From Laetmonice hystrix (lineage: Eukaryota): a DNA stretch of 64,000 nt. The notes under the pieces are model-generated. The model ran no database searches, was not told where the DNA came from, and saw nothing but the letters and a program-made list of their open reading frames with translations. The stretch is from NCBI GenBank assembly GCA_965235115.1, contig OZ249447.1, positions 15,004,001 through 15,068,000 on the forward strand. Direction: 5' to 3'. Below are positions 35,501-62,144 of the stretch, in pieces; the first letter of the stretch is position 1; each line of letters opens with the position of its first letter. Made by a program: the position numbers and the translations under genes.

Positions 35501-37778
35501 CAATACCCTGTTCACACCAAAATCATCAATTAGTACTGTAACAATGTATCAATACTTCAACCAAAGCTCCTGTAACATTGCTTCTATAGGGTGAATGAAC
35601 GATATCCAAGTGTACAAGTGTACAAAGTACAATTCACATTGTACAAGGTACAATTCGCATTGTACAAGGTACAATTCGCATTGTACAAGGTACGATTCGC
35701 ATTGTACAAGGTACGATTCGCATTGTACAAGGTACGATTCGCATTGTACAAGGTACGATTCGCATTGTACAAGGTACGATTCGCATTGTACAAGGTACGA
35801 TTCGCATTGTACAAGGTACGATTCGCATTGTACAAGGTACGATTCGCATTGTACAAGGTACGATTCGCATTGCCACCAAGGACGGACACAGTCTCATCTT
35901 TAACAGGGCATGCCACACGGGACATGCTACTACATGTTCTGCTTTTCAAAGATCTCTCCCAGTGAAAAAAGAAACTACACTCCAAGGAACGAAAAAAGGG
36001 GAGACTCATGGAACCAAAGAACAAGAAAAGGCTCTGTGGCTTCCTTAAGAATACCAAAAGAAAACTTGGCATACTGTCCACCATCGTGTCTCTATATCCG
36101 TGCTGTGTAGCATATGTTGTGTAGCATAATGTTGTGTAGCTTATGTTGTGTAGAGTGTGCGGTATATATAGAGCACGCATTGTGTCTGATTCCGCCACAC
36201 TTACCTTGTATGCCTGGGTAAATTGCTAAATAGCAAACAAATGTCTGGATTGTACAGATGGTTTTGAGTCATTTGAGTTACTCTCTTGGATACTTTGTGT
36301 GTAACCGTAAAATCTGACCCAGCGGGAAGTACAGTATACTGAGTGCCATTAGAGTACTCCACATATTCTTACCTGAACATTTCGCTGTTCATTTACAATG
36401 AGTTACCCACCCATTACATGCGAGTTACCGGTAACCAAAGCTGACAGGATGCATGCCCTGCATTAGTAGACCAAGGATAAGTTCTCACGAGCAGTGAGTC
36501 TGCTTCCACTGTATAATTGTAGACTCACCTTGCGTCAGCCTCCAGTCCTTTGAGAGAGTCCTGGTTACTTTTCTTCTCATTCGGATCCCCCACCAGGAAG
36601 TAGGTCTCTCTGGTGGCAGGAGCATCAAGTTCATGTAATGTTCACAATCATATATCAACTCTGAGGAGTAATTTACTCAATTCTCTATTAACTTGTGACA
36701 ATAAAACTTTACACTCAGTTGGACATAAATACTACTTGAAAATATGGCCAAATATGACAGAAATCCCATTTAGTATAACCACAGAATAGGTAGATGTACA
36801 TATTCTGTGGTATAACCCTAAAAGGATTTCTGGTTCGGAAGCATAAGTTTCAAATTTCATGTATATTCAACGAATGGGATTCAAGTTCTGCTTGCTCCCA
36901 CAGGCTCATGATATTTAACTTGACTGATAGGTACAGGCCTTCAGATACATTTGATTTCCACCTTAAAATAGGAAGTTAATGCAATGTCCCATACTTAACA
37001 CTTGGGAAGTCATTAAGCAAGCCAAGAAGGGAGTTGTAGTATGCGATGATCTGAGACCGCAGTGCATACTGAGCCAGTCTCTGATTGGCTCGTTGGCAGT
37101 ACTCAAGGATCAACTTCCTAAAACACACCATGTAACACGACTTTTCATGACATAAACATTCAAAGAACATAACCGCTGACGTTCAAAGATTCTCAATGAT
37201 TGTTCTAAATTCTAAAAACATGTCACAGACAACCTATACATGGAGGTTCCATGTCGGAACAGGAAGGCTCTGTTACAAATATGATGCTGTTACCTTTTAA
37301 AGTTCTCCATTTCTTTTGCGTTTTTCAGCAAGGCCGCCATTGCTGTTTTCTTGTTGATGAATTCGTTGAGCATGAGATCACGACTAGGTCCCTAACAACA
37401 TAAAAAACATGTGATATAATAATTATGATATTATAATAACCCAGCTTCACAGGTTACACATAGTCTCATGACAATAACCAATGCAAATTCAGACTAATTA
37501 ATTTACTTTAATTCAGCTAATTAAGGAACTTGTTTTGTTACTAAACTTTATTTCTATCCACTATAACCACTACGCAATACAGATGACCGCCAGTAGAGCG
37601 CACCTTCTCAAGCTGCAGAGAGACGAACGCCTCAGGAGAGCGCGTCTGTTTGGGCGGGTAGCCTCCGCCCCGCCTGCCGGCTACCGGTGACGTCATCTGG
37701 GTGGCAGACGACATCCCTGTTGTCGCAGTCACTGAGCTCTTCTCGCTCTTTGTCTCAGTTGGACTGCCAGGACGTCCA
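23556..37778 (-). CDS. CCDC162: Large coiled-coil protein, probably CCDC162-like; 3' 24 exons (~1160 aa), 5' exons not in the window
   Basis: Phase-compatible GT-AG exons: 37604-37778, 37294-37391, 36995-37117, 36529-36609, 35227-35507, 34704-34882, 34315-34466, 34114-34203, 33707-33927, 33355-33520, 33079-33229, 32696-32833, 32287-32465, 32005-32068, 30457-30713, 30153-30253, 29632-29780, 29326-29496, 28148-28243, 26770-26958, 25770-25833, 25277-25339, 23919-24100 and 23556-23678 (stop TAG). Peptides include KRPRRVLTDDGHFVLNVWFIPH, SADWGGTEG, YSMYYENLLRNHHQLLY and HERALKLDAFQRVDDLQ. The gene itself is very well supported; the CCDC162 name is from memory and less certain. Confidence 0.7.
25999..26740. 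repeat. Minisatellite, 34-bp unit (TGTGAGTGACGTATGTTGGACTGGATGGGACCGA), about 22 copies
   Basis: Read directly; no unique spacers; intronic in the CCDC162-like gene; it produces the spurious repetitive ORFs in the track. Confidence 0.95.
29999..30136. mobile_element. Small Harbinger-like MITE
   Basis: Imperfect TIR GGGACCGTTTCACTAA / TTAGTGAAATGAGCCC, CTG direct repeats on both sides, internal TACGAG/CTCGTA motifs. Confidence 0.6.
35620..35872. repeat. Minisatellite, 21-bp unit (TGTACAAGGTACGATTCGCAT), about 12 copies
   Basis: Read directly; intronic. Confidence 0.95.
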
Positions 37779-38057
37779 CTACAACATACAAAAGGAGAAT
37801 AACTTACGGAAATGTCAACTGTCCATATTTTTTTAATGATTGAGGGCACTGAAGTTTGGACGGGAAACAGCGTTGGGTATAAACCGGGCATGGGCAAGAA
37901 CAAAGATAAAAAATGATAGGATTCAATAATTTATTTTTTTACATATGTACAGTGTGCATAAATAATATTTACATCATCCAATTGCTTGGCATACAAAGCA
38001 CCGATGCAATGAGAGACTTCACAAGTTCGTATTCACACGCGGCCATAAGTTCAGGCT

Positions 38058-39134
38058 CTAATCTCTGGACTTCCTGGAGCCGGCAAACAGGATGGACTCG
38101 GACGACACGGTTCTCAGGCGCTGACGGTGGGCGGTGATCTCCTTGAAGGCCTTGGTGTTGCCCACCCTCTTGCGCTTGTTGGCGAACCACTTCTTGACCT
38201 GTTCCGAGGTGATGTCTCCTGCCTTGGCCATCACTTCAGCAGTGGACGGGCTCGGGTACGGGTGGTCCTCATTACGTTTGTACCACAGGTTCATGATCTT
38301 GACGGCGGTCGGGTTGAGGGCGGCGGACTTCCTCTTACGGGCCAGGACCTTCTGTGTTCCTGTTAGGGTCTGGGTCAAGTCCTCCAGGTCGGCACCGCTG
38401 CGTTCCTCTGGGCGTCTTTGGTGGCAGGAGAAGAGAAGGTGAAGGCTGCTCTCGACACGACTGACAAGGTGGTGCTGGAGGAGGTCGTAGTAACCATGGA
38501 TATTCTGGGACAACCACGGAGTGCTGACGGACTGATGGAGGCTCTTGTTGCGGTCCGTCTCGATCAGCGACGTCTGGTGGTCGTAGAAGTTGCGGAGCTG
38601 GTCCAGTTGTGACCTGTCGCCGACGGTTGATGCTGCACGGAGGAAGTTGTTGTGGAGACTGGGGGCACGGACCTGGAAGGACTCTGGGAAGGTGGTCGGG
38701 GTCGACATCAAGGTGAACGGTAGAGACGCCTGGTGACACTCGCTGTGGATAGCAATCTGTAGGTCCGGGAACATTGGGTGGGCGGCGATTCGCTGTACCT
38801 CAGGGTTGACGGAGTCAGGGATCTGGTAACTGTAGACATCCTGGATTCTGGTCTCAGTGTGGACGACGTCTGGTGGGAGTGGAGACAGAGGGCGGTACTG
38901 CAAGTGGAAGGACACGATGAGCACAAATATCGGAGAAATAATTTGGTCAATCCGCCAGACAAGTATATTGAACTCTTACTAACTCTAACTACACACTTCA
39001 AAATACATCAAGCTCTCTATAAGGAGATGAAGGGGTATTCGAGCCCCATAGCTTACCAAGGTCATAGGGTCAGGAAGATGAGTATCTTCTACCGTGAGGT
39101 CAAGGGTCAGGGCAGCGGGGCGTTTAGAAGTCAT
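38058..39134 (-). CDS. Divergent PBX-like TALE homeobox gene, type A copy 1 (2 exons, 305 aa)
   Basis: Exon 1 39057-39134 (MTSKRPAALTLDLTVEDTHLPDPMTL), intron 38898-39056 (GT-AG), exon 2 38058-38897. Homeodomain RKRKSAALNPTAVKIMNLWYKRNEDHPYPSPSTAEVMAKAGDITSEQVKKWFANKRKR has the TALE PYP loop and WFxNKR. Confidence 0.9.
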
Positions 39135-39955
39135 GGTGGACGTTGCCGAGTAGCTTGATAAGTCGCTTGATTCTGGAGATGTTGATAGCTCGAGTCTCGG
39201 ATGAGGTTTGGCTGACTCCTCTAGCTGGGCCTGTATATATACCGTCCCACCCCTCGGCTGGGGCTGAGTGCCGGGGCTGAGACCATCTTTGAGCTGCCCC
39301 TCGGTTCACACCTCGGCCCTTTGACCTATTGTGGGCCTCAGGAAGGGCGGCTTACTCGCTAACCTGTTTGAAGCCCACTTCAAAAGGAAGGTGTGACTCT
39401 CAGGTCCCAGTTTGCTCTTTCTCAAAAAGGGAGGTGTGAATGAGGTGTAAGCAGGCTTTGCAAACAATACTTTCCCGGATTGTGAACAACATCCGAATAT
39501 TACCTTACGCTCCGTTTATCTCTTATTTTTATTGTCGTATATTACGCGGACAATACACGGACAAGACATACCTTTTTGCTATAAATAATGTTTGATGTAA
39601 CGAAAATAAGGCCTCCTGTCTCCAGGAGACATAGTTTCTGTAACCAGCATGCTCTGCAGTAGATTATGCCATTCATAACTTTACATAATAACAGGGATTG
39701 AATTAAAAGGTTCTAAATGTTTTACACTGAAGTTGTTTTATGAAGATGCCCGTAAGGCATATAGCGGTAAGACTATTAACATTTCTACCAAAACGCGCGT
39801 ATAACCACTAAAACACAATCATTATCCCTAGCTCCAACCCTAACCCCCTAGATCTGACTATCAGATCTCCTCCAACCCCCCAACCCCCCGCCCTAAGTTT
39901 GTGTTCCCAATGGGGATCAGCCGATAAGCACGCAGCACAAAGTCGGAAGAGAAAA

Positions 39956-41169
39956 GGGATACCCCAGGGGAGCGTTTTAGGACCTCTGCTGTATCTACTA
40001 TATGTCAATGATATCATGGACTGCGATACTGCATCAGATTTAAACATGTTTGCAGATGACACAGCGATGGTGGCCCATGGAAGGGACCTGGAAGAAGTCA
40101 CGGCACAGATCAAGGACGACATGACCAAGCTGACAGGATGGTTTAACGCTAACAAACTAACAGTAAATCTCAACAAAACAAAATGTATGTTTTTCAGCAA
40201 GAATGTTCACAAGGACCATGAACTACCTGGCATAGAAGCGAATGGTGTTCAACTAAACTTTGTACATCAATATTCATACCTGGGTGTAACTCTGGACGAC
40301 AAACTACAGTTCAATGAGCATATAAGGAATAGTATTAAGAAAGCAGGTAATAAGGTGTACATGTTAGCAAAGATAAGACAGTTCATCAACACCCAGACAG
40401 CTCTTACCGTATTTAAAGCTATGATACTGCCCTATATAGAGTATGGAAACATCTTTCACGGGACATGTAATGAGGCCTACCAACAGAAGCTACAAGTCAT
40501 TCAAAATAATGGTTTAAAAATAGCGCTGAAAAGGGACATTTTATACAGAACGGTCGACCTACACATAGAAGCTAAGATCATACCTTGTAAATACAGAAGA
40601 CTTGTGATGTTACAAAAACGTATAAAGAGGTCAAGGAGGGTCAGGCACCACTGAACCGCAGAAACATCAGAACAAGAACTCATGAGGCAGCAACACTTGT
40701 CGTGCCATTTCCTAAGTCAGAATTATTTAAGAAATCTAACGCATACAGTAAAACTGTAAATTGGAATGCTTTACCCCCTTATCTAAGAAACTTAGGTGAG
40801 TATAACCGGTTCAAGCAAGAGATAAAAAATTATTATACCAGTATGTTCCTAACAGATAACAATCGTGGCAAGAATTGCTAATAGGGAAATTCAGGCAGAG
40901 TATAAAATTAGTAACATTTAAGTCTATCACTGCGCAGTTGTTATTACCCGAAAATATTTATGTGTCAAGTTGTTCACACTCTGCATTATATGATTACGGC
41001 TTGCTTGGTGAATTACTAAAATAATACTATGACTGTATGTATATTATGTATATATGTCATGTCTGTAGATACTGTACATATTCAAAACAGGACCCCACAT
41101 TTGTTACGGCATCCAGCCGAGTGGGAACTCCTGGGTAAAGATGTCAATAAAAAAAAAAAAAAAAAAAAA
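39956..41169 (+). mobile_element. 5'-truncated non-LTR retrotransposon (CR1/L2/Jockey-like LINE): RT C-terminus, 3' UTR and polyA tail
   Basis: GIPQGSVLGPLLYLLYVND...MFADDT...YLGVTLDDKLQF; after a frameshift near 40620-40650 it continues ...FKKSNAYSKTVNWNALPPYLR...FKQEIK to stop 40879-40881; AATAAA merging into an A-run at 41146-41169. Confidence 0.9.
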
Positions 41170-41559: not shown

Positions 41560-41860
41560 TGCTTTTGAAGTGGGGTTCAAAAGGCTCCACACTCGAGACG
41601 CCCTCGTTTAAGTGGTACTCAACATACTTGTAACGGTAACACCTCATTCACATGCACCGTCCTATTCTAGGAGGAGCAAACTGGGACCTGAGAGTCACAC
41701 CTTCCTTTTGAAGTGGGCTTCAAACAGGTTGGCGAGTAAGCCGCCCTTCCTGAGGCCACAATAGGTCAAAGGGCCGAGGTGTGAACCGAGGGGCAGCTCA
41801 AAGATGGTCTCAGCCCCGGCACTCAGCCCCAGCCAAGGGGTGGGACGGTATATATACAGG
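41560..41860 (+). promoter_or_regulatory. Type-A promoter: T-box half-sites, TTTGAAG palindromes and TATA (mirrored at ~39230-39450 for copy A1)
   Basis: TAACACCT 41637, TCACACCT 41695, AGGTGTGA 41777, TTTTGAAGTGGGGTTCAAAA 41563-41582, CTTTTGAAGTGGGCTTCAAA ~41705, TATATATA 41849-41856; ATG at 41956. Confidence 0.6.
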
Positions 41861-41955
41861 CCCAGCTAGAGGAGTCAGCCAAACCTCATCCGAGACTCGA
41901 GCTATCAACATCTCCGGAATCAAGCGACTTATCAAGCTACTCGGCAACGTCCACC

Positions 41956-43015
41956 ATGACTTCTAAACGCCCTACTGCCCTGACCCTTGACCTCACGGTA
42001 GAAGATACTCATCTTCCTGACCCTATGACCTTGGTAAGCTATGGGGCTCGAATACTCCCTTCATGTCCTCATTGAGAGATTCAAGTGTAAGAGTTCAATA
42101 TATACTTGAAATCAGTCTGACGGATTGACCAAATTATTTCTCTTTATATTTGTGTTCATCGTGTTCTTCTGCTTGCAGTACCGCCCTCTGTCTCCACTGT
42201 CACCAAACGTCGTCCACACTGAGACCAGAAACCAGGATGTCTACAGTTACCAGATCCCTGACTCCGTCAACCCTGAGGTACAGCGAATCGCCGCCCACCC
42301 AATGTTCCCGGACCTACAGACTGCTATCCATAGCGAGTGTCACCAGGCGTCTCTACCGTTCACCTTGATGTCGACCCCGACCACCTTCCCAGAGTCCTTC
42401 CAGGTCCGTGCCGCCAGCCTACACAACAACTTCCTCCGTGCAGCATCAACCGTCGGCGACAGGTCACAACTGGATCAGCTTCGCAACTTCTACGACCACC
42501 AGACGTCGCTGATCGAGACGGACCGAAGCAAAAGCCTCCATCAGTCCGTCAGCACTCCGTGGTTGTCTCAGAATATCCATGGTTACTACGACCTCCTCCA
42601 GCACCACCTTGTCAGCCGTGTAGAGAGCAGCCTCCACCTATTCTCCTGCCACCAAAGACGCCCAGAGGAACGCAGCGGTGCCGACCTGGAGGACCTGACC
42701 CAGACCCTAACAGGAACACAGAAGGTCCTGGCCCGTAAGAGAAAGTCCGCCGCCCTCAACCCGACCGCCGTCAAGATCATGAACCTCTGGTACAAACGTA
42801 ACGAGGACCACCCGTACCCGAGCCCGTCCACGGCTGAAGTGATGGCCAAGGCAGGAGACATCACCTCGGAACAGGTCAAGAAGTGGTTCGCCAACAAGCG
42901 CAAGAGGATGGGCAACACCAAGGCCTTCAAGGAGATCACCGCCCAACGTCAGCGCCTAAGAACCGTGTCGTCCGAGTCAATCCTGCTTGCCGGCTCCAGG
43001 AAGTCCAGAGATTAG
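41956..43015 (+). CDS. Divergent PBX-like TALE homeobox gene, type A copy 2 (2 exons, 304 aa)
   Basis: Exon 1 41956-42033, intron 42034-42178 (GT-AG, phase 0), exon 2 42179-43015; near-identical inverted copy of A1; CCACCATG start context. Confidence 0.9.
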
Positions 43016-43244
43016 AGAGACCCTCATCATGAACTTTGTAACCACCGGTGCTGCTTGTGTGATCATGTATAGAAACTTGTATATACTATCTACATTATGT
43101 AAATACTACCAACGAATAAATTATTCTATTCCTCACATTTACTTCTTGTTATTACTCCCCTCCCCTGCACGTACCCACCGTAACTGTACTATATCGTCAT
43201 GCCAGAACCCCCAAGGTAAAAACCATAGAAAATTGATAGCAAAA

Positions 43245-43844: not shown

Positions 43845-44657
43845 ATGGCGACCACTGAGCTGACTTTCCACGACCTTCTCGACATGCTGCCCTTACCCTG
43901 CAGTAGTCCATGCCCTCAGCCTCCAGACAGTCCCCTGTCTCAGCACCAGCACACCGACGCTAACCCGACCTTCCACGATCTACAGACTGCCATCCACAGT
44001 GCCTGCCAACAGACGTCTCTCCCGTTCACCCTGATGTCCACCCCGGCCACCTTCCCAGTGCCCTTCCAGATCCGAGCCGCCAGCCTTCAGACCAGGTTCA
44101 CTACGGAACTCACAGTCACTGACAGTCCAGAGCTGGGCCAGCTTCGTGTCTTCTACGACCAGCAGGTGTCCCACATCGAGATGGAGCGCAACCACAGTCT
44201 ACAGCTGTCCGCCAAGTTACCATGGTTGTTCTTCACCATCAACAGTTACTACGACAACCTCCAGCATCAGCTTGTCAGCCGCGTCGAGAGCAGCCTCAAC
44301 TTCCTCTTTTCCTACCGCCAGCAGCCATACCAACCCAAGGCCAGCCAACATGTCTCTACACCTTGCAAGCAAAAGGTTCCGGTCAGGAAGCCCAAGTCCC
44401 CTTCCCTCAACCCGACTGCGGTCAAGATCATGAGCCTGTGGTACAAACGTAACCAAGCCCACCCGTACCCATCCCAGTCGGCAACTGAAGTGATGGCCAA
44501 GACAGGAGGGATCCGAGCTGAGCAGGTCAGGAAATGGTTCGCCAACAAGCGCAAGAGATCTGGATACACCAAGAAGTTCGACGTCTCCGGCAAGCCCCGC
44601 TGCAGCACAACTGTACCGAGTGATCATCTACTGCTCACCACAGCCACCCGGGAGTGA
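43845..44657 (+). CDS. Divergent PBX-like TALE homeobox gene, type B copy 1 (intronless, 270 aa)
   Basis: AAGATGG start 96 nt after TATA; homeodomain RKPKSPSLNPTAVKIMSLWYKRNQAHPYPSQSATEVMAKTGGIRAEQVRKWFANKRKR; AATAAA at 44812. Confidence 0.9.
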   Translation: MATTELTFHDLLDMLPLPCSSPCPQPPDSPLSQHQHTDANPTFHDLQTAIHSACQQTSLPFTLMSTPATFPVPFQIRAASLQTRFTTELTVTDSPELGQLRVFYDQQVSHIEMERNHSLQLSAKLPWLFFTINSYYDNLQHQLVSRVESSLNFLFSYRQQPYQPKASQHVSTPCKQKVPVRKPKSPSLNPTAVKIMSLWYKRNQAHPYPSQSATEVMAKTGGIRAEQVRKWFANKRKRSGYTKKFDVSGKPRCSTTVPSDHLLLTTATRE

Positions 44658-46215: not shown

Positions 46216-48880
46216 GCCCTCATTCAGCGAGCAGGTCATACCATCCTTACTGCTCACCGTGACCACATCAAGCTCTCATCCACAAAACGACACCGTGAAG
46301 ATGGCGACCACTGAGCTGACTTTCCACGACTTTCTCGACATGCTGCCCTAACCCTGCAGTAGTCCATGCCCTCAGCCTCCAGACAGTCCCCTGTCTCAGC
46401 ACCAGCACACCGACGCTAACCCGACCTTCCACGATCTACAGACTGCCGTCAACAGTGCCTGCCAACAGACGTCTCTCCCGTTCCCATTGATGTCCACCCC
46501 AGCCACCTTCCCAGTGCCCTTCCAGATCCGAGCCGCCAGCCTTCAGACCAGGTTCACTACGGCACTCACAGTCACTGACAGTCCAGAGCTGGGCCAGCTT
46601 CGTGTCTTCTACGACCAGCAGGTGTCCCACATCGAGATGGAGCGCAACCACAGTCTACAGCTGTCCGCCAAGTTACCATGGTTGTTCTTCACCATCAACA
46701 GTTACTACGACAACCTCCAGCATCAGCTTGTCAGCCGCGTCGAGAGCAGCCTCAACCTCCTCTTCTCCTACCGCCAGCAGTCCGACCAACCCAAGGCCAG
46801 CCAACATGTCTCTACACCTTGCAAGCACAAGGTCCCGGTCAGGAAGCCCAAGTCTCCTTCCCTCAACCCGACTGCTGTCAAGATCATGAGCCTGTGGTAC
46901 AAGCGTAACCATAACAGTTTCGGAGGAAACTGATTGTTAATAAATACGCGATACTTACCTCATAACATATAAGAGACTTACAGTTTCTCGATTCCCAATG
47001 GTCAAAAAATTTAATAAAAGTGTTCTAAGTGAAACAAGAATGAGTTCCACCAGAACTCCTGTCTATCTAACATATTCGGTGTATGGCTCCCTCTAGCGGA
47101 GATCCGCTGGATCGTGCGCCCCCTAGTGTCCATGTGACCTAGTAGTCAGATTTAAATGACCACTAAGCGGGGAGGCGGGAAGGGCCTTTAATGTTATGAG
47201 GTAAGTATCGCGTATTTATTAACAATCAGTTTCCTCCGAAACTGTTATGGTTAATTACATACGCTTCTACTTACCTCATAACATATGAGAGCGAGTGCTA
47301 AGCATAGGAGGTGGGAAGACAGAAATATTCACTCCACAGCCATACCCATTGAGGCGTAGGCCCATGCACTTGTTTTCACCTGGGAACGTTTATAGCGTTA
47401 AATCCTGAAAACTGCTATACGTGTGTAGGGAAGGTAATACCTGCTCCTTGTGAGGGAACCAAGGGCCGGAAGACTGAACAGATAACATCTGCCCCCCCCC
47501 CTTCTTTTTGTCCCACGCTCTCCATCATGCAGTGACGTGGACAAACAACGGCCTGGACCACTATGAGGTGGCCCAGACTAAAAGGGCGTCCTCCTGACCA
47601 CCAGGTTCACGCAATAAGACTGTAAAGGTGGTGTCTGATAGCCAAAAGGCAGCCTCGAGGAATTCGGCGAAGGTTACTCCATTAATAGGAGCCAAGGACG
47701 CAGAAATCGCCCGCACCTCAAGAACCTTAACACGATGAAACTGTAAAGACTTGGACAAGGCCGCGTCTGCCCGAGTCAAGGCTATAAGCTAAAGCCTTCC
47801 ACCTTCCACAATTGTAGCGGGCGTGATGTCGAGGGGTACGCACTCACCAAAGACACGACACCCCCTCTAACAGGCAGCTCTACAGGCGCTCCTCATCATC
47901 CGGCCTGAGCTCGGAGCTCAGAGCCAGGGTCGGGTTGTTAGCCACAGATTGTGGTAACAAAGGTCACAATGGAGGAACAGGGGCCAAAACGCGCTCCCCC
48001 GAAGGCAGTAAATTCCGACCACCTCAGCCCTGAGGTTAATGCTACAGGAACATGGTCTTTCAAGTACAACTTGGTGTACGGAAGACATAAGATAAATAAG
48101 GGGGGACGCAACAATGCGTTCAGTACCACCGACCAACTCCAGTAAGGGGCCTTCCTCGGCTTTACGGGCTCAAGAAATATCAAATTGCGTAATAGCGCAC
48201 TGAGTTCCCGTCAAGAGCTAAAGGAACCTCCGCCTGGTGCTGATGCATTTGCTGCAATCACTGATCTGATTCCTCGCACGGCGGAGACCGACAACCCCCG
48301 AAGAAACCTGTCAAGCAGACAATCGGCTACTGACAGGGGGCGGTGAGATCAAAGTCATATGTTCCCCTGCCCATTCAATAAGGAAGGCCCGCTGTCTCGA
48401 TACGCAGCTTGCGAGGAGGGCCTATGTTTCTCGGCCATGCTCTGGGCCGCTTGTCCCGAGAATCCACGCTTCTCACCTCTGTTCCTGACAAGCAGAGGGG
48501 TGTAAATCGAAAATCTTCGGAGCTGAATGCCACTTCCCTCTCTAAAACAACAGATCGGGGTCATAAGGCAGGGATCGAGCCCAATCCCGCAACAATTCTG
48601 ATATCTCTGTGAAACAAGGCCAACCCGGCCCATATTATGACTGGCCCAGACAGGCGCGTTTCGCGGCGCGTTCGAGACGCGTCGGCCATTTTCATGCACG
48701 CCTCTTGACGCACGCACGCACGCACGCCCCTGTGTGTCCCCGGCTTTAAACTTGCCCTGCACATGAAATGACGCACAACGTCACTCGGTGCTGGCGACAC
48801 CACCAGAGGATGTCCCCGGTTATCCGGAATAGTAGCAGTGACCGAGTGTCCCTTTGATTTAACAGATAGGTCACTGCCAT

Positions 48881-49043
48881 CCCAACTAACACACAACCTT
48901 TTCACAACGTTGAATAAAGTTGTAGTTTGGTCACTTCACAACGTTGTGTCTAACGAAACTACAACGTTGTGGCAACATAGAAGACCAAACAAATTTACGT
49001 AGCGTTATGGGAACGTTGTAGCAACGTAATATTGCTAGCGGGG
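48881..49043. mobile_element. Small CACTA/EnSpm-like MITE nested in the DIRS element
   Basis: Imperfect termini CCCAACTAACA / TGCTAGCGGGG, AT on both flanks, internal CAACGTTG repeats. Confidence 0.45.
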
Positions 49044-51958
49044 ATCGTACTGTCGGGGTGGATCAGGACTACTGATCGCGTCGGTAGCCAGGCGAAGTGA
49101 TGAAGAGCCTAGGAAAATTGCCTTTAATTCTAGACCATATATGTGTCCGTGTCACACCCCGCTCCAACTATTTAGGAAATAGCTCACAAACCTCCCTGAG
49201 ATATCTGTGGAGAAGGGAAACATCCGGGGTTAGATATTCCAAAGTACACCCCTCTGAAAAGTCTGTGGATCGATCCACCACTGGAGGAACTGCGCCAGAG
49301 ACCGAGGAAGGAGAACCCTGCACCCGCAGAGGAAATCCCTGCTCGAGCGCCACGCACTCAACAACGCAAACTGCATCAGTCACCCATGCAGTTTGCCAAG
49401 CGGTCCTGAGTTCAAAAAAGAAACTCCGATAAACTGCAGACATAGCTTGTCGGTGCAACTTCCAGGCCTATACACTTCACCAGGTTTATCCTCCATCCCA
49501 GGGGAGGTAAAACTGAGAGCAACTGGGTGGCCTGAACGGGCCACACCATGTAAGGATGAAGCTCCATCCCTTCCGACCTGTCCAGCTTCCCAACTGTGTT
49601 GCCAGCTAGGTAAACTCGGACCGAACGGCAGAACTACCAACTGGAAACATGGACTGTCGTTGGAACACTGAGAAACTTCTAGTGCAAGAAAGTGTCCTCG
49701 ATGTCTATCGTGTCTATCGTATCTACCTATAGACACTGAGACACCCCACGTTTCTAGAGAACCCCTACGGGTTGAAGGAAAATAATTCCCGGGGCGGACT
49801 CACTACCGACCCCAAAGTGACGACTGCACCTTTCTCTCGAAGTTTCCTGATCTCTCCTATTCTTTAGCTAGAACTTAAGGAAACAGAAAGGGAGGGCCCT
49901 GCGAGAGTGAGCCGATGAACGGGCCATACCTGGCGGGCTCGACAAACTCCAGACGCAATCACTCCCTGAGAACAGACAGGGTCCACGGAATCGGGTAATG
50001 ATGAAGCAAGCTCACCGCTTGTGTGTGCCTCGTTGTAAGCGAACGCTTAATTCCGAACCAAAATGTCCAGATCCAACTCAGGCTTATATCGCTAGACGGC
50101 TATGCAAAACTAAGGACTTAGAGTCGAACCCCGGCGAAACAGGATAGAGTAGATAGGAATTAAAAACCAAACTCTATGCCGAGTGACGTATAAGGCCAGG
50201 GCCGCCCTAGTCCTATCGCCGAAAGATATAGCCTCCGGCGACTATAACCAAGGTCGGCCTAGATGGCCGCCGCCGTGACTAGGCGAACACGGTTTGCCTG
50301 AGCAAAGAAAGGGCACTTTGGAACTGAAAAGGTCGAAGGCTCCTTCAGTCCAAGAGAAAGGTCCCTTGGGTCCAACCTAGAACCCCCTACCAGGAAGGTC
50401 CGAATGCAGAGTACATTCCGCCATAAAAAACGGATTAACGGGGGTTGATCTCCCCTAACGTCCGACCGAAGTAGGGTACAAGGGGAAGGGATCCGTGAAA
50501 AGATCCATAGTTGGACAAACTGAGCGTAGATCCTCTACACCCCCCGAAACTCTGCCCGTAACCGTCTAGATATTGGCAACCAATCCATGCCAAATCGCCA
50601 CAAATAACAGACCATATAGGACTCTACTTAATCCGATGTGATTAACTCAAAAAGAATTTTTGAGTCACCATGTTTTTCCTTTGTCTCTCAATTTAAAAAC
50701 TGTATCAACATGCAGTTTTCCAGATAGTCTGATCTTTACCACCGTTTCCATAGACTACTCACAGCAATAGATGGCGCTACAAGGACTCTACCTCGTGCCA
50801 TCATGGTCCCCAAGCCAGTTTAAATAACTTCATATGTGTCAGGCGGGGGACAAAGAGAACAGGAAATTTTAGGATTTTCCAAAAAAGCCGATTTAAAGAT
50901 TTTCAAGGCTTACTTGACTTCAAGGTGCTGCGGAGACCCTGCAAGCATACAAGAGAGAGGCCGCCTCTAGCCTACTGACTCCCCCGATCCGCGAGGGAGG
51001 CGCGATTACGCTGCCTGGCCGACAGAGCACTCCTGGATCGGTCGCGTAAGCCTAGGCCATAGGCCTATACTGATCGACATCTCTCATGGTCCCAAGATCT
51101 AGACCAGACCATGGTAACGACGCTGTCCTATGAAAACCCCAAAGTCTAGTGCGACGGCCAACTTGACCCGGGCAACGATCCTGAGATCGACGACCAGCGT
51201 GAAAGAGACGTTCCTAGGTACAGACGATCACGAACGCTCCCGATCTCGGTCTGGATGCCGCCTCTGGGATTAAATATATATAATATCGCCTGCACAATAT
51301 CGTCTCAATGGTCTAGATGCGAGAGATATCTTCCTGGCATGTAGATCTCTAGCCAAGGCATCGATCTCGAACTCGATCTTGATCTAGTCATTACGGGGAG
51401 ATCGATCAACAAACAAAATCGTCTATGCGATCTTGTCTCTTAATGCACTTAGTGCGAGAGAACTCTTTCCTCGCATGTATCCTAGGCCTAGATCTCTAGC
51501 TCCAGGCACCGATCCTGATCCTTATCCCGATCCTGATCTGGATTCCGATCCTAACTGGATCCCGATCTCATCGATCTCGAGCTCGACGGACCTGCCAAAT
51601 CTTGTGCCTATCAAGCGGGGAAATCTTCCACTTGATGCCATCTCCAGCGGGAGATAAACTGTATCCCTAATTCATGACGGGTGCAAATAACCCCAAAATT
51701 CGGGAGTTCTCCCGCCTAAGCAGGAGTAACGATCTCGACCTCGAGCCAGGAACGAACTGGAGTAAGGCTCGGTGCCTGATCTTGATCAGATCGGATCAGA
51801 TCGGGGGATCGAACCGCAGATCATCAATTGATCGACTGCCCGACATCGTCTTAGTGAGCCTATACGAGAGATCTCAATCCTCGCATGCCCGAGGCACCGA
51901 GGCCCAAAGGCACATATGCCCGATCTCAGGAAGAATCCCCGATTGTCTACGCGCGTCT

Positions 51959-52350
51959 GCGCGGCTGGCCCGGGTGGTCTCCTCGAGGAGACCACCGGAC
52001 GCAGACGAGGGGGAGAACGGTCGCTCGAGCTCTGGCTCGAGGCGAACGCGAGTCTCCCCTCGCGTCAAGAGATCGATCCCGAGCCGACTCGCGCGGCTGG
52101 CCCGGGTGGCCTCCTCGAGGAGACCACCGGACGCAGACGAGGGGGAGAACGGTTGCTCGAGCTCTGGCTCGAGGCGAACGCGAGTCTCCCCTCGCGTCAA
52201 GAGATGGATCTAGGGCTCGCGCGGCTCGCGCGGCTGGCCCGGGTGGCCTCCTCGAGGAGACCCCCGGACGCAGACGAGGGGGAGAACGGTCGCTCGAGCT
52301 CTGGCTCGAGGCGAACTCGAGTCTCCCCTCGCGTCAAGAGATCGATCCAG
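51959..52350. repeat. Three ~132-137-bp tandem repeats in the DIRS gag-like region
   Basis: Units start at 51959, 52091 and 52228 (GCGCGGCTGGCCCGGGTGG...GCGTCAAGAGAT). Confidence 0.9.
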
Positions 52351-54394
52351 AGACGCTGAACGTCTGCGTGTGATCGTCTCAACGTCTCAACGGGCTTAAT
52401 TCCCTTCCTCGCGTGGGAAGCCCGAGGCACCGATCCCGAGACATTATCATTTCGACCCAGTGATCGGTGCCTACGCTGTACGCCACCCGCTGTGCGTGAT
52501 TGGGCGTATCAGCGTATTCAGACTGGTCAGGTGGGTGCGTAGGTCGAGGATCCATGACCTTACGCTTACCCACCTAGTCCTGCACGGGACTGACCAGCTG
52601 ATTGAGACGTGACGTCACACCCTTAGCCACCACGGTGGGCGGGTGACACGCTTCATTGCCTGGAGCAAGCACAGTGTGCACCCCGGCTCACTGCTGACCG
52701 TTCCGCCTGGTCAGACAAGGCCAAAGGAAAACTTGTCGGTCAACATGGCCTCGCTTACCTGGACTAACAGAGGCCGACAAGGAGTGTACCTGGCCCTTAG
52801 AATAACTAAGGGAACATGCTGAATAACTTCTACCACACAAGGAGGTAGTGCGTCTACCTATACTGGTAGACTACAAACAACAAATAGACAGGAATGACCA
52901 AAGGGAATACAGAACTATAAGGAAAAAACCACGGTACTCACGAAGACGTCCTGCGGTAGCAGTGGTCATTTCAAATCTGACTACTAGGTCACATGGACAC
53001 TAGGGGGCGCACGATCCAGCGGATCTCCGCTAGAGGGAGCCATACACCGAATATGTTAGATAGACAGGAGTTCTGGTGGAACTCATTCTTGTTTCACTTA
53101 GAACACTTTTATTAAATTTTTTGACCATTGGGAATCGAGAAACTGTAAGTCTCTCATATGTTATGAGGTAAGTAGAAGCGTATGTAATTAACCAAGCCCA
53201 CCCGTACCCATCCCAGTCGGCAACTGAAGTGATGGCCAAGACAGGAGGGATCCGAGCTGAGCAGGTCAGGAAGTGGTTCGCCAACAAGCGCAAGAGATCT
53301 GGATACACCAAGAAGTTCGACGTCTCTGGCAAGCCCCGCTGCAGCACAACTGTACCGAGTGATCATCTACTGCTCACCACAGCCGCCCGCGACTGAACAC
53401 GTCTGCTTTATGGGCATGAACTGGCGATTGCTGTGATTTACCATGACTGTCTATAATGTGTAATAATGTGTAATCTACATGTATTATATCTTGTACATGT
53501 ATCACCAAGGTGATATATCAGATGTATATACTGTACATAGCAATAAAATAAAAATCCATTCTAATTTACATCCTCTGGTCGATCTATTCCTGTATATTTT
53601 CAATTTTCCTTTAGTTGTTTTTCCTCGACAACCTATCATTCGTTATTTTAAATTTACAATCTCAAAACATCCTTTCAAGTCAAATATTACTCGTCAATCA
53701 CGATTTATATTCAGAGGATTGCTCGTAATCTTTCTGAAGGCGAAAAGGAGTTCTTCGTAGCGCCACCTGTTGGTTACAGATTATCAAACTTTGAGCAGAA
53801 TAGAGGCACGTTCAAAGCGCAACCTAGTGGAATCATTCCAAGACCAACTCAATAATTTTGATAGTTTCAGCAGGTCAAAAATTAACTTTTAATTTTCCTT
53901 TGAAATTTTTCTATTAGGCCCCTACTCTTTTTACCTAGGTCCAAAAGAGTTATAATATATTAATAATATACACGTATTTCCTGTCCTAGTTACCCACGAT
54001 GCTATCTCAGCTATATGGTGTATAACATACGTTTCATGTTTTTTATCATAATAAATACTGGTCATATCCCAAAGAAGTCTCCCGAGTTGGTCCTCTGACA
54101 AAGTGTCTCTTCGTCTTGAACTCGTCCCCTGGTCAAGTCAGCAGCACTGAATCCTATTCTCGGTTGGTTACGGACAACATAATCTTCATGTGCAGTTATC
54201 AGTGCCCTCTGGGGGTTCTTGAAGATACTGTATTAACACCACCTGGTGACTACTTTGAACACTTCATTCTCCCGTCTTCCCCCTTTCCGACCGCATGCTG
54301 TGTTGACAAATGACCAATTTTTCCCATCGAATAGGAATCCCTTAGAAGTTTTTTCTATCAACACTGCCCTGTAAGACTCTGCCACGAAACAACG

Positions 54395-55169: not shown

Positions 55170-55997
55170 ATGGCGACCACTGAGCTGACTTTCCACGACC
55201 TTCTCGACATGCTGCCCTTAGCCTGCAGCAGTCCATGCCCTCAGCCTCCAGACAGTCCCCTGTCTCAGCACCTGCACACCGACGCTAACCCGACCTTCCA
55301 CGATCTTCAGACTGCCATCCGCAGTGCCTGCCAACAGACGTCTCTCCCGTTCACCCTGATGTCCACCCCGGCCACCTTCCCAGTGCCCTTCCAGATCCGA
55401 GCCGCCAGCCTTCAGACCAGGTTCACTACGGCACTCACAGTCACTGACAGTCCAGAGCTGGGCCAGCTTCGTGTCTTCTACGACCAGCAGGTGTCCCACA
55501 TCGAGATGGAGCGCAACCACAGTCTACAGCTGTCCGCCAAGTTACCATGGTTGTTCTTCACCATCAACAGTTACTACGACAACCTCCAGCATCAACTTGT
55601 CAGCCGCGTCGAGAGCAGCCTCAACTTCCTCTTTTCCTACCGCCAGCAGCCATACCAACCCAAGGCCAGCCAACATGTCTCTACACCTTGCAAGCAAAAG
55701 GTTCCGGTCAGGAAGCCCAAGTCCCCTTCCCTCAACCCGACTGCGGTCAAGATCATGAGCCTGTGGTACAAACGTAACCAAGCCCACCCGTACCCATCCC
55801 AGTCGGCAACTGAAGTGATGGCCAAGACAGGAGGGATCCGAGCTGAGCAGGTCAGGAAATGGTTCGCCAACAAGCGCAAGAGATCTGGATACACCAAGAA
55901 GTTCGACGTCTCCGGCAAGCCCCGCTGCAGCACAACTGTACCGAGTGATCCTCACCACAGCCACCCGGGAGTGAACACGTCTGGTTTATGGGCATGA
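55170..55997 (+). CDS. TALE homeobox type B copy 3 (275 aa; C-terminal tail frameshifted after the homeodomain)
   Basis: Homeodomain intact; an 8-nt deletion (ATCTACTG) between 55950 and 55951 changes the tail to PHHSHPGVNTSGLWA*. Confidence 0.85.
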   Translation: MATTELTFHDLLDMLPLACSSPCPQPPDSPLSQHLHTDANPTFHDLQTAIRSACQQTSLPFTLMSTPATFPVPFQIRAASLQTRFTTALTVTDSPELGQLRVFYDQQVSHIEMERNHSLQLSAKLPWLFFTINSYYDNLQHQLVSRVESSLNFLFSYRQQPYQPKASQHVSTPCKQKVPVRKPKSPSLNPTAVKIMSLWYKRNQAHPYPSQSATEVMAKTGGIRAEQVRKWFANKRKRSGYTKKFDVSGKPRCSTTVPSDPHHSHPGVNTSGLWA

Positions 55998-58736: not shown

Positions 58737-59549
58737 ATGGCGACCACTGAGCTGACTTTCCACGACTTTCTCGACATGCTGCCCTTACCCTGCAGTAGTC
58801 CATGCCCTCAGCCTCCAGACAGTCCCCTGTCTCAGCACCAGCACACCGACGCTAACCCGACCTTCCACGATCTACAGACTGCCGTCAACAGTGCCTGCCA
58901 ACAGACGTCTCTCCCGTTCACCCTGATGTCCACCCCAGCCAGCTTCCCAGTGCCCTTCCAGATCCGAGCTGCCAGCCTTCAGACTAGGTTCACTACGGCA
59001 CTCACAGTCACTGACAGTCCAGAGCTGGGCCAGCTTCGTGTCTTCTACGACCAGCAGGTGTCCCACATCGAGATGGAGCGCAACCACAGTCTACAGCTGT
59101 CCGCCAAGTTACCATGGTTGTTCTTCACCATCAACAGTTACTACGACAACCTCCAGCATCAGCTTGTCAGCCGCGTCGAGAGCAGCCTCAACCTCCTCTT
59201 CTCCTACCGCCAGCAGCCAGACCAGCCCAAGGCCAGCCAACATGTCTCCACACCTTGCAAGCAAAAGGTTCCGGTCAGGAAGCCCAAGTCTCCTTCCCTC
59301 AACCCGACTGCTGTCAAGATCATGAGCCTGTGGTACAAGCGTAACCAAGCCCACCCGTACCCATCCCAGTCGGCAACTGAAGTGATGGCCAAGACAGGAG
59401 GGATCCGAGCTGAGCAGGTCAGGAAGTGGTTCGCCAACAAGCGCAAGAGATCTGGATACACCAAGAAGTTCGACGTCTCTGGCAAGCCCCGCTGCAGCAC
59501 AACTGTGCCGAGTGACCATCTACTGCTCACCACATCCAGCCGGGAGTGA
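58737..59549 (+). CDS. TALE homeobox type B copy 4 (intronless, 270 aa)
   Basis: Intact ORF nearly identical to B1; same homeodomain. Confidence 0.9.
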   Translation: MATTELTFHDFLDMLPLPCSSPCPQPPDSPLSQHQHTDANPTFHDLQTAVNSACQQTSLPFTLMSTPASFPVPFQIRAASLQTRFTTALTVTDSPELGQLRVFYDQQVSHIEMERNHSLQLSAKLPWLFFTINSYYDNLQHQLVSRVESSLNLLFSYRQQPDQPKASQHVSTPCKQKVPVRKPKSPSLNPTAVKIMSLWYKRNQAHPYPSQSATEVMAKTGGIRAEQVRKWFANKRKRSGYTKKFDVSGKPRCSTTVPSDHLLLTTSSRE

Positions 59550-61331: not shown

Positions 61332-62144
61332 ATGGCGACCACTGAGCTGACTTTCCACGACTTTCTCGACATGCTGCCCTTACCCTGCAGTAGTCCATGC
61401 CCTCAGCCTCCAGACAGTCCCCTGTCTCAGCACCACCATACCGACGCTAACCCGACCTTCCACGATCTACAGACTGCCGTCAACAGTGCCTGCCAGCAGA
61501 CGTCTCTCCCGTTCACCCTGATGTCCACCCCGGCCACCTTCCCAGTGCCCTTCCAGATCCGAGCCGCCAGCCTTCAGACCAGGTTCACTACGGCACTCAC
61601 AGTCACTGACAGTCCAGAGCTGGGCCAGCTTCGTGTCTTCTACGACCAGCAGGTGTCCCACATCGAGATGGAGCGCAACCACAGTCTACAGCTGTCCGCC
61701 AAGTTACCATGGTTGTTCTTCACCATCAACAGTTACTACGACAACCTCCAGCATCAGCTTGTCAGCCGCGTCGAGAGCAGCCTCAACCTCCTCTTCTCCT
61801 ACCGCCAGCAGTCGGACCAACCCAAGGCCAGCCAACATGTCTCCACACCTTGCAAGCACAAGGTCCCGGTCAGGAAGCCCAAGTCTCCTTCCCTCAACCC
61901 GACTGCTGTCAAGATCATGAGCCTGTGGTACAAGCGTAACCAAGCCCACCCGTACCCATCCCAGTCGGCAACTGAAGTGATGGCCAAGACAGGAGGGATC
62001 CGAGCTGAGCAGGTCAGGAAGTGGTTCGCCAACAAGCGCAAGAGATCTGGATACACCAAGAAGTTCGACGTCTCCGGCAAGCCCCGCTGCAGCACAACTG
62101 TACCGAGTGATCATCTACTGCTCACCACAGCCGCCCGCGACTGA
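61332..62144 (+). CDS. TALE homeobox type B copy 5 (intronless, 270 aa)
   Basis: Intact ORF; same homeodomain. Confidence 0.9.
   Translation: MATTELTFHDFLDMLPLPCSSPCPQPPDSPLSQHHHTDANPTFHDLQTAVNSACQQTSLPFTLMSTPATFPVPFQIRAASLQTRFTTALTVTDSPELGQLRVFYDQQVSHIEMERNHSLQLSAKLPWLFFTINSYYDNLQHQLVSRVESSLNLLFSYRQQSDQPKASQHVSTPCKHKVPVRKPKSPSLNPTAVKIMSLWYKRNQAHPYPSQSATEVMAKTGGIRAEQVRKWFANKRKRSGYTKKFDVSGKPRCSTTVPSDHLLLTTAARD

What the first reader, a model, noticed from the sequence alone, without database searches (positions are those of the whole stretch)
42179..42720. N-terminal region looks like a highly derived PBC/MEINOX dimerisation domain
By eye, QRIAAHPMFPDLQTAIHSEC resembles MEIS IYGHPLFPLLALIFEKC. 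RSQLDQLRNFY...IHGYYDLLQHHLVSRVESSLHLL resembles PBX1 PBC-B RAKLSQIRQIY...[23 protein letters not shown] (reference sequences from memory). These blocks are the parts conserved between types A and B (B: ELGQLRVFY...INSYYDNLQHQLVSRVESSL). The genes would then be PBX-derived and might dimerise with, or titrate, MEIS/PREP. The block may also be what was named the PADRE domain in lophotrochozoan TALE genes, which would make PADRE a diverged PBC domain (inference).
Basis: inference. Interest (0 to 1): 0.72.

Follow-up and report, generated by a model that had tools for sequence, protein, structure and literature searches.

The report
PADRE domain with a PBX-like fold

Summary
The quoted peptides are present, apart from one residue. 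They lie in exon 2 of a two-exon TALE homeobox gene (type A). This gene belongs to a cluster of two type A and five type B copies.

The N-terminal block is a real domain:
- dN/dS between types A and B is about 0.33, against 0.28 for the homeodomain and about 1 for the flanks.
- An exhaustive profile search finds it in 106 cluster representatives, nearly all with a TALE homeodomain.
- AlphaFold2 gives a confident all-helical model (pLDDT 87).

It is very probably the PADRE domain of spiralian SPILE genes.

The PBC/MEINOX reading is only partly supported.
- Against it: no Pfam PBC or Meis hit recurs among 107 members. Profile-profile comparison with 20 real PBX sequences gives P of 0.05-0.27. 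Shuffled PBC profiles score as well 10-14% of the time.
- For it: the nearest model in the ESM Atlas to the N-terminal domain alone is a PBX4/PBC cluster (TM 0.56, 116 residues). The helix order matches PBX. The homeodomain profile is closest to PBX/Exd.

I put homology with PBC at about 0.4. MEIS/PREP binding is untested. An earlier scan note on this window had already called these genes SPILE-like.

The parts
41957..42034 (+). Inferred exon 1 of the type A gene (26 codons, MTSKRP...PMTL).
   Evidence: An ATG lies about 100 nt downstream of a TATATATA box at about 41850. The reading frame is open up to a GTAAGC donor at 42035. Inferred from sequence only; no RNA run was found.
42035..42178 (+). 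Inferred phase-0 intron (GT..AG, pyrimidine-rich 3' end).
   Evidence: The frame of exon 1 joins the frame of the ORF at 42179.
42179..43015 (+). Exon 2 of the type A gene: 278 codons plus the stop. It holds the N-terminal domain, a linker, the homeodomain and the tail.
   Evidence: ORF. Pfam Homeobox_KN at aa 204-243, E = 8e-11. AATAAA lies about 100 nt after the stop.
42272..42370 (+). Short N-terminal helices of the domain (exon-2 aa 32-64). They include the conserved P-x-F-x-x-L-Q...E-C helix (HPMFPDLQTAIHSEC) and the SLPFTLMSTP turn.
   Evidence: AF2 model helices H8-14, H19-31 and H37-40, pLDDT about 89-94. Family consensus. Largely outside the stretch that superposes on PBX.
42398..42658 (+). 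Three-helix core of the domain (exon-2 aa 74-160, 87 residues): one helix of 18 residues followed by a hairpin of 28 and 34 residues. This is the PADRE-sized block.
   Evidence: AF2 helices H50-67, H71-98 and H103-136, pLDDT 94-98. Nearly invariant L, R and D columns across the 105-sequence domain alignment. dN/dS of 0.33-0.34 between types A and B. Superposes on a PBX4/PBC model.
42659..42733 (+). Variable linker between the domain and the homeodomain.
   Evidence: 15% identity between types A and B. pLDDT 54-60.
42734..42922 (+). TALE homeodomain (RKRKSAALN...WFANKRKRMGN).
   Evidence: The closest solved relatives are PBX1/Exd.
38058..38897 (-). Exon 2 of the inverted twin type A gene (97% identical protein).
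   Evidence: Inverted repeat arms 38056-39436 and 41655-43017.
39056..39133 (-). Inferred exon 1 of the twin type A gene.
   Evidence: Mirror of 41957-42034 inside the inverted repeat arm I3, 98% complementary. Inferred.
43845..44657 (+). Type B gene, copy 1. Same domain plus homeodomain, 54% identical to type A.
46487..46933 (+). Truncated type B copy. The ORF ends inside the homeodomain.
   Evidence: An earlier scan note attributes the break to a DIRS element insertion; I did not re-test that.
55170..55997 (+). Type B gene, copy with a changed C-terminal tail.
58737..59549 (+). Type B gene copy.
61332..62144 (+). Type B gene copy.

Best explanation
The region is the N-terminal companion domain of a spiralian-specific (SPILE-type) TALE homeobox transcription factor, the domain published as PADRE. 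It is an autonomously folding, all-helical module. Two or three short helices pack on an 87-residue three-helix core, made of one 18-residue helix and a 28+34-residue helical hairpin. A variable linker joins this module to a PBX-like TALE homeodomain.

Shown here:
- The domain is conserved under purifying selection as strong as that on the homeodomain.
- It occurs in about a hundred diverged protein clusters, nearly all with a TALE homeodomain.
- It is confidently predicted to fold.

Inferred:
- It works as a protein-protein interaction (dimerisation or partner-docking) surface that sets the partner choice of the homeodomain. The helical modules upstream of other TALE homeodomains (PBC, MEINOX, and fungal HD1/HD2 N-termini) work this way.
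- Its origin is most economically a compacted PBC domain. The short PBX helix H3 and the H4/H5 hairpin would be retained, the disordered linker lost, and the hairpin shortened by about 15 residues. I rate this at about 0.4.
- If so, the genes are fast-evolving PBX paralogues amplified in tandem.

The confidence given here (0.8) is for the core statement: a real, folded PADRE-type interaction domain of a SPILE-type TALE gene. The PBC-origin clause carries its own figure of about 0.4.
For: Domain reality:
- dN/dS is 0.33-0.34 for the domain, 0.28 for the homeodomain and about 1 for the flanks.
- An exhaustive HMMER search with the window-only N-terminal profile finds 106 representatives at E <= 1e-3 and 23 at E <= 1e-10. 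Of the 107 scanned members (106 representatives plus the window's type A protein), 92 carry Homeobox_KN.
- The AF2 model has pLDDT 87 and pTM 0.67.

PADRE identity:
- The confident core of the model is 87 residues.
- Hit P0081 has the domain at residues 51-180, directly before a homeodomain. That homeodomain is about 83% identical, by my count, to Lottia Lgig_1410135, which is TALE-XVII A and PADRE-bearing.
- A slowly evolving bivalve/annelid subfamily matches the domain profile with hhalign probability 99.7% and E = 9e-27.

PBX link:
- The ESM Atlas search with the N-terminal domain alone returns a PBX4 cluster (PF03792 in 100% of members) as the first row. It has TM 0.56 and 116 residues aligned at 3.8 A. 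The other rows have TM 0.26-0.44 and 56-91 residues aligned.
- No PDB chain aligned by Foldseek exceeds TMq 0.47.
- The helix order is the same as in my AF2 model of PBX (H101-112, H142-186, H194-236). It also matches the published AF3 PBX1 model, with a short H3 packed on the H4/H5 hairpin.
- The family homeodomain profile scores PBX1/Exd at 74 bits, PKNOX1 at 61 and MEIS at 60. The PBX alignment runs on into the post-homeodomain extension.
- NCBI's automatic names for members are extradenticle-like, PBX2/4-like and ceh-40-like.
Against: - No sequence method links the domain to PBC or MEINOX.
- Neither Pfam PBC nor Meis_PKNOX_N appears for the two window proteins at E <= 10. Neither is among the 25 families most often matched by the 107 scanned members.
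- None of the 106 exhaustive hits is a PBX.
- hhalign against 20 real PBX N-termini gives probability below 1% and P of 0.05-0.17. 10-14% of shuffled PBC profiles do as well.
- A PBC HMM scores real members no better than their reversed or shuffled versions.
- The slowest-evolving subfamily gives a different, non-collinear best hit, P = 0.27.
- The reciprocal Atlas search with my PBX model did not recover even PBX clusters.
- The Atlas's own low-confidence model of member P0133 has no PBX neighbour.
- The structural link therefore rests on one search with one model.
- The direct alignment to the published PADRE box could not be read, because the figure was only partly machine-readable.
Confidence: 0.8

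Rival explanations
1. PADRE is a lineage-specific invention, or is diverged from an unidentifiable source. It shares only a common helical-bundle arrangement with PBC. The PBX4 hit reflects convergence on 'short helix plus long hairpin'. On this reading the domain is still a folded interaction module, but it says nothing about PBX ancestry or MEIS binding.
For: - All sequence tests are negative.
- The structural hit was not replicated.
- The literature treats the origin of these clades as obscured (PMC5322547).
Against: - Out of millions of Atlas clusters, the first row is the one family that has a helical module in the same place before the most similar homeodomain class.
- That row aligns more residues (116) than any unrelated hit at comparable rmsd.
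Confidence: 0.4
2. The domain derives from the MEINOX (MEIS/PKNOX HM1/HM2) domain rather than from PBC. The genes would then be MEIS/PREP-like and would pair with PBX.
For: - The conserved P-x-F-x-x-L...E-C helix resembles, by eye, the MEIS HPLFPLL...EKC motif.
- PBC itself is reported to contain a MEINOX motif (Burglin 1998, cited in PMC6219170).
Against: - Meis_PKNOX_N was not reported for the window proteins or among the recurrent Pfam families.
- The homeodomain profile prefers PBX over MEIS and PKNOX by about 13 bits.
- No MEIS-labelled cluster appears among the Atlas rows.
- WFANKR is of the PBX type (NKR), not the MEIS type (NAR).
Confidence: 0.07
3. The similarity to PBX is real and functional. 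The domain keeps the PBC docking surface, so these proteins dimerise with or titrate MEIS/PREP in the early embryo.
For: The part that superposes on PBX includes the hairpin. In the AF3 PBX1-PREP1 model the hairpin gives the hydrophobic docking site for PREP1 helix H4.
Against: - The PBX1 head helices H1-H2 that dock on the MEINOX bundle have no demonstrated counterpart here.
- The hairpin is about 15 residues shorter.
- In the monomer model the 18-residue helix already completes a three-helix bundle with the hairpin. It might fill the groove a partner would use (inference).
- No multimer prediction or binding data are available.
Confidence: 0.12

Closest known systems
PADRE domain of spiralian-specific TALE (SPILE) homeobox genes (Paps et al. 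2015, PMC5322547; Barton-Owen et al. 2018, PMC6118893; PMC8524836, 2021)
   Same: - A conserved block of about 87-90 aa N-terminal to a TALE homeodomain with WFANKR.
- Spiralian proteins, often in tandem clusters.
- One family member has a homeodomain about 83% identical to a PADRE-bearing Lottia gene.
   Different: - The conserved unit seen here is longer, at about 130 aa. It adds two or three short helices with a P-x-F-x-x-L-Q...E-C motif in front of the 87-residue core.
- No structure or origin had been proposed for PADRE in the papers found.
PBC domain of PBX/Extradenticle (Pfam PF03792)
   Same: - A helical module directly upstream of the most similar homeodomain class.
- A short helix followed by a long helical hairpin.
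- It is the nearest Atlas model (TM 0.56).
- The best, though non-significant, profile hit falls at the start of the first long helix in both.
   Different: - No significant sequence or profile similarity.
- No disordered Ala/Gly linker between the short helix and the hairpin.
- Hairpin arms are 28 and 34 residues, against 45 and 43.
- No demonstrated counterpart of the PBC-A head helices.
- A variable linker precedes the homeodomain, where PBX has a continuous helix.
- Position 50 of the homeodomain is A, not G.
MEINOX domain of MEIS/PKNOX/KNOX (Pfam PF16493 Meis_PKNOX_N)
   Same: A helical dimerisation module upstream of a TALE homeodomain, with a by-eye likeness in one short motif.
   Different: No recurrent Pfam hit. 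The homeodomain is further from MEIS than from PBX. I did not test this with real MEIS sequences.
PBL (PBC-B-like) domains of algal PBX/GLX TALE proteins (PMC6219170)
   Same: A precedent for PBC-type heterodimerisation domains that have diverged until only short motifs and secondary structure remain.
   Different: They come from other kingdoms, and I made no direct comparison here.

Membership tests
TALE-class homeodomain (Homeobox_KN, PF05920) | Homeodomain with a three-residue loop extension between helices 1 and 2; Pfam hit above the gathering score. | tested here: met
   PF05920 at 42 bits against a cut-off of 24, for both type A and type B. The loop ...NEDHPYPS... is visible.
PADRE-domain SPILE TALE genes | A conserved region of about 87-90 aa N-terminal to the homeodomain. 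| tested here: met
   The confident three-helix core spans 87 residues. It is conserved in 106 representatives and under purifying selection.
PADRE-domain SPILE TALE genes | Homology of that region to the published PADRE box of CgTALE9-13, LgTALE or NfSPILE-A/C. | tested here: inconclusive
   The evidence is indirect only. Member P0081 has the domain and a homeodomain about 83% identical to Lottia TALE-XVII A. The published alignment figure was machine-read only for the homeodomain part, and none of the cluster members I looked up carried an accession number.
PADRE-domain SPILE TALE genes | Restricted to Spiralia (molluscs, annelids, brachiopods). | tested here: inconclusive
   All named true members are bivalves or the annelid Owenia. 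Most hits come from unnamed ENA or Logan assemblies. One plant protein among the hits (P0071) is a repeat-driven false positive.
PBC domain (PF03792) | Match to the Pfam PBC model. | tested here: not met
   No PBC match for the two window proteins at E <= 10. PBC is not among the 25 families most often matched by the 107 scanned members.
PBC domain (PF03792) | Profile-profile similarity to real PBX N-termini. | tested here: not met
   hhalign probability below 1% and P of 0.05-0.27. The shuffle control gives 8-11 of 80. The HMM control with reversed or shuffled sequences shows no difference.
PBC domain (PF03792) | PBC-type fold: a short helix packed on a long helical hairpin upstream of the homeodomain. 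| tested here: inconclusive
   The first Atlas row is a PBX4/PBC cluster, TM 0.56 over 116 residues, and the helix order is the same. However, it is a single search, the reciprocal and second-model searches were uninformative, and the PDB shows only generic bundles.
PBC domain (PF03792) | PBC-class homeodomain next to it. | tested here: inconclusive
   The family profile is closest to PBX1/Exd (74 bits, against 60-61 for PKNOX/MEIS) and includes the post-homeodomain extension. But residue 50 is A in most members (G in three of them), and I built no class-wide tree.
PBC domain (PF03792) | Heterodimerisation with MEIS/PREP through the domain. | not testable with these tools
   No multimer prediction or binding assay was available.
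MEINOX (Meis_PKNOX_N, PF16493) | Match to the Pfam model, or to real MEIS/PKNOX N-termini. | tested here: not met
   Not reported for the window proteins or among the recurrent families. I could not obtain real MEIS sequences, so no profile-profile test was run.

The most novel reading that the evidence does not exclude
PADRE is a compacted PBC domain. The spiralian-specific SPILE/PADRE TALE genes arose from PBX. They kept the short H3 helix and the H4/H5 hairpin as a tight three-helix bundle, and lost the disordered linker and perhaps the MEINOX-docking head. This would give the 'orphan' spiralian TALE expansion an origin. It would also predict an altered or lost MEIS/PREP partnership in cleavage-stage blastomere specification.
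Probability: 0.4. Interest if true: 0.7.

Novelty: new member of a known kind. Interest (0 to 1): 0.5.

Why it matters
SPILE/PADRE genes are reported to specify blastomere fates in spiralian embryos. Their origin is described as obscured, and their companion domain has no assigned structure or function.

This work adds three things:
- a confident structural model of the domain
- an extended boundary for it, about 130 aa rather than 87
- a concrete, testable candidate origin, the PBX H3-H5 module

It also shows that the by-eye sequence argument does not stand on its own. If the PBX link holds, it ties a lineage-specific developmental novelty to the ancient PBX-MEIS partnership. It would then say which interaction to test first.

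Tried and rejected
- **Word-index search, N-terminal 190 aa.** Nothing at E <= 0.01.
- **Two more word-index searches** (homeodomain of P0096; the full-length family alignment). These gave only family members, mostly unnamed, and no PBX or MEIS.
- **Getting PBX sequences through the protein tools.** This failed. I fetched them instead by a degenerate DNA pattern for WFGNKRIRYKK in metagenome and metatranscriptome contigs. I kept 20 non-redundant ORFs with at least 278 in-frame residues upstream of the WFGNKRIRYKK motif.
- **Human contigs.** I took none of the contigs for human. The short vertebrate-looking fragments were not used further.
- **MEIS/PKNOX sequences.** The MEIS motif is therefore untested.
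- **Profile of the N-terminal domain against PDB sequences.** Only noise.
- **Language-model feature search.** It gave a basidiomycete HD1/Mating_N cluster twice, at 0.81 and 0.77. That is within the tool's noise range, so I treat it only as a lead.
- **Literal 'PADRE' string.** Not found in any fetched protein.
- **Cluster look-up of ten top hits.** No names or accession numbers.
- **RNA evidence for the gene model.** No RNA run holds the stretch, so I did not use read laying.
- **By-eye motif matches of my own.** I found further ones, such as DPALVAIQE against DPQLMRLDN. I set them aside because hhalign produces equally good non-collinear matches.

Full report
**What is at the coordinates**

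The stretch 42179-42720 is the first 180 codons of exon 2 of a TALE homeobox gene, which I call type A.
- An ATG at 41957 lies about 100 nt downstream of a TATA-like box. It opens 26 codons that end at a GTAAGC donor (42035).
- A pyrimidine-rich tract and an AG precede 42179, and the frames join.
- Exon 2 runs to a stop at 43013-43015, with AATAAA about 100 nt beyond.
- The splice is inferred. No RNA run holding the stretch was found.

Pfam finds only the TALE homeodomain, at exon-2 residues 204-243.

The gene has an inverted twin with a 97% identical protein. The repeat arms are 38056-39436 and 41655-43017, with a reverse-transcriptase fragment between them.

Five copies of a second type, type B, follow on the + strand. 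They are 54% identical to type A, and one is truncated. An earlier scan note on this window had already called these genes SPILE-like TALE genes.

**The observation**

The quoted peptides are present. One detail differs: this copy reads SSLHLF. The quoted SSLHLL belongs to the twin copy, which has one more codon.

I could not check the MEIS string.

**The N-terminal block is a real domain**

Conservation between types A and B:

| Region | dN/dS |
|---|---|
| Exon-2 residues 39-160 (domain) | 0.33-0.34 |
| Homeodomain | 0.28 |
| Segment before the domain | about 1 |
| Linker | not calculable (dS saturated); 15% identity |
| C-terminal tail | about 1 |

A profile of the window's six N-terminal regions, without the homeodomain, was scored against 1.84 billion representatives.
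- It found 106 proteins at E <= 1e-3 and 23 at E <= 1e-10.
- Of the 107 scanned sequences (the 106 plus the window's type A protein), 92 carry Homeobox_KN.
- Most of the 106 have WFANKR in helix 3.
- One plant protein is a repeat-driven false positive.

With a 105-sequence alignment of the domain, AlphaFold2 gives a confident model with pLDDT 87 and pTM 0.67.
- Short helices lie at model residues 8-14, 19-31 and 37-40.
- Then come helices 50-67, 71-98 and 103-136.
- The last three form an 87-residue core with pLDDT 94-98.

**Identity with PADRE**

Paps et al. [quoted passage not shown] Later papers extend it to clades XV, XVII and XVIII, and to SPILE clades A/C, with modified forms in B and D (PMC6118893, PMC8524836).

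The evidence that this domain is PADRE:
- The size and position fit.
- Hit P0081 carries the domain at residues 51-180, immediately before a homeodomain. By my residue count that homeodomain is about 83% identical to Lottia Lgig_1410135, which is TALE-XVII A and listed as PADRE-bearing.
- A slowly evolving subfamily matches the domain profile at hhalign probability 99.7%. Its named members come from Argopecten, Mya, Ruditapes, Mizuhopecten, Dreissena, Mytilus, Ostrea, Magallana and the annelid Owenia.

I could not align to the published PADRE box itself. The supplementary figure was machine-read only for the homeodomain part, and the cluster look-ups gave no accession numbers. I rate the PADRE identity at about 0.85.

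**Is it a derived PBC/MEINOX domain? Sequence tests**

All sequence tests are negative.
- Pfam shows no PBC or Meis_PKNOX_N match for the window proteins at E <= 10. Neither family is among the 25 most often matched by the 107 scanned members.
- None of the 106 exhaustive hits is a PBX.
- To run a profile-profile test I needed real PBX sequences. The protein tools did not reach them. I scanned metagenome contigs for a degenerate pattern encoding WFGNKRIRYKK and kept 20 non-redundant cDNA-like PBX N-termini. I took none for human, and vertebrate-looking fragments were left unused.
But the probability is below 1% and P is 0.05-0.17, whether whole domains or halves are compared, in local or global mode.
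- 8-11 of 80 column-shuffled PBC profiles score as high.
- A PBC HMM scores real family members no better than their reversed or shuffled versions.
- The slow subfamily gives a different, non-collinear best hit, P = 0.27.
The family has N there in 73 of 105 sequences.

The by-eye resemblance is therefore not more than chance by any sequence measure I could apply.

**Structure tests**

A shape search of the ESM Atlas cluster representatives was run with the N-terminal domain model alone.
- It returns a PBX4 cluster as its first row. All members of that cluster carry PF03792.
- For that row, TM by query is 0.56, with 116 residues aligned at 3.8 A, covering model residues 29-152.
- The other rows are unrelated helical proteins, with TM 0.26-0.44 and 56-91 residues aligned.

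My AF2 model of a PBX N-terminus has helices at 41-52, 56-64, 72-91 and 101-112, then a disordered linker, then 142-186 and 194-236. A 2026 preprint models PBX1-PREP1 with AF3. It describes exactly this layout: H1-H2 in a head that docks on MEINOX, a short H3 packed on the H4/H5 hairpin, and PREP1 H4 docking on the hairpin. The authors found no similar fold in the PDB (10.64898/2026.02.16.706105).

The PADRE core (18-residue helix, tight turn, 28+34-residue hairpin) has the same order of elements. It lacks the disordered linker, and its hairpin is about 15 residues shorter. The slow subfamily's hairpin is 8 residues longer than in type A.

Two attempts to replicate the structural hit were uninformative:
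- The reciprocal Atlas search with my PBX model (pLDDT 71) did not recover even PBX clusters.
- The Atlas's own low-confidence model of member P0133 has only generic neighbours.

**The homeodomain**

The type A homeodomain alone, and a profile of 85 family homeodomains, were both compared with PDB sequences. Both find PBX1/Exd first.

| Solved relative | Profile score (bits) |
|---|---|
| PBX1/Exd | 74 (E = 5e-20) |
| PKNOX1 | 61 |
| MEIS | 60 |
| MATalpha2 | 50 |
| TGIF | 46 |

The PBX alignment continues past the homeodomain into the PBX C-terminal extension, with a one-residue gap. NCBI's automatic names for members point the same way. Position 50 is A in most members and G in three. I did not build a class-wide tree, for lack of the other classes' sequences.

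**Weighing it**

For PBC ancestry:
- The nearest Atlas model is the one family that has a helical module in the same place before the most similar homeodomain class.
- That hit is the most extensive structural match found in any library.
- The helix order agrees.
- PBC-type domains are known to diverge beyond sequence recognition (PMC6219170).

Against it:
- There is no sequence signal at all.
- The core arrangement is generic in PDB terms.
- The evidence is a single, unreplicated structural hit.

I put homology with PBC at about 0.4, a lineage-specific or untraceable origin at about 0.4, and MEINOX origin at about 0.07. Retained MEIS/PREP binding is a further question, which I put at about 0.12.

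**How it most likely works**

Shown: a folded, constrained helical module tethered by a variable linker to a PBX-like TALE homeodomain, in a tandemly amplified gene family.

Inferred: it is a protein-protein interaction module that determines the partner of the homeodomain, like the helical modules before other TALE homeodomains.

Whether the partner is MEIS/PREP, PBX, itself or none cannot be decided here. In the monomer model the 18-residue helix already completes a three-helix bundle with the hairpin. It may therefore occupy the position taken by either PBX H3 or the partner's helix. This last point is speculation.

**Novelty**

PADRE and the SPILE genes are published, so the object is a new member of a known kind. 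The papers found propose no structure or origin for PADRE. The structural model, the extended boundary and the candidate PBX link are new, but the link is unproven.

Noticed in passing
window 38056-39436 and 41655-43017: The two type A genes form a head-to-head inverted duplication, 92-98% complementary. An ORF resembling a reverse transcriptase fragment (39899-40654) lies in the 2.2 kb between them. The two copies differ by one codon in the last helix of the domain (HLLF against HLF).
   Followed up: partly
window 46487-46933: A type B copy has an ORF that stops inside the homeodomain (…WYKRNHNSFGGN). An earlier scan note attributes this to a DIRS element insertion at 46906-53194. The ORFs at 51674-52373 are internally repetitive.
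   Followed up: no
L121:2105-2986 (-) and L121:10001-10687 (+): A contig from another assembly (ENA ERZ26222911) carries the two best homologues. P0001 is 62% identical to type A. The other is a 293-aa gene, the length of P0002, which lies on the same contig. They sit head to head, 7 kb apart, so the paired arrangement is not unique to this genome.
   Followed up: partly
window:42179-42748 (exon-2 residues 1-190) and P0133:1-168: The language-model feature search gives the same first hit for two different family members' N-termini, with the homeodomain excluded. The hit is a basidiomycete HD1 mating-type cluster with Pfam Mating_N, at scores 0.81 and 0.77. This is inside the tool's noise range. 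It is curious because Mating_N is also a dimerisation module upstream of a TALE-like homeodomain.
   Followed up: no
P0071 (Buddleja alternifolia, 1104 aa): A plant WIYLD-domain protein appears among the profile hits through six short repeated stretches that match profile positions 94-120. I take it as a false positive. It also explains the odd one-member Pfam families in the alignment scan.
   Followed up: partly
window 25949-26644 (-) and 35584-36198 (-): These are long ORFs made of tandem peptide repeats (…SNIRHSHWS…PTYVTHIGP… and NANRTLY x n). They are probably translated satellite or minisatellite DNA rather than genes.
   Followed up: no
hhalign of the slow subfamily against the family: The slowly evolving bivalve/annelid subfamily has 8 extra residues at the tip of the helical hairpin compared with types A and B. 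Hairpin length therefore varies within the family, in the direction of the longer PBX hairpin.
   Followed up: no
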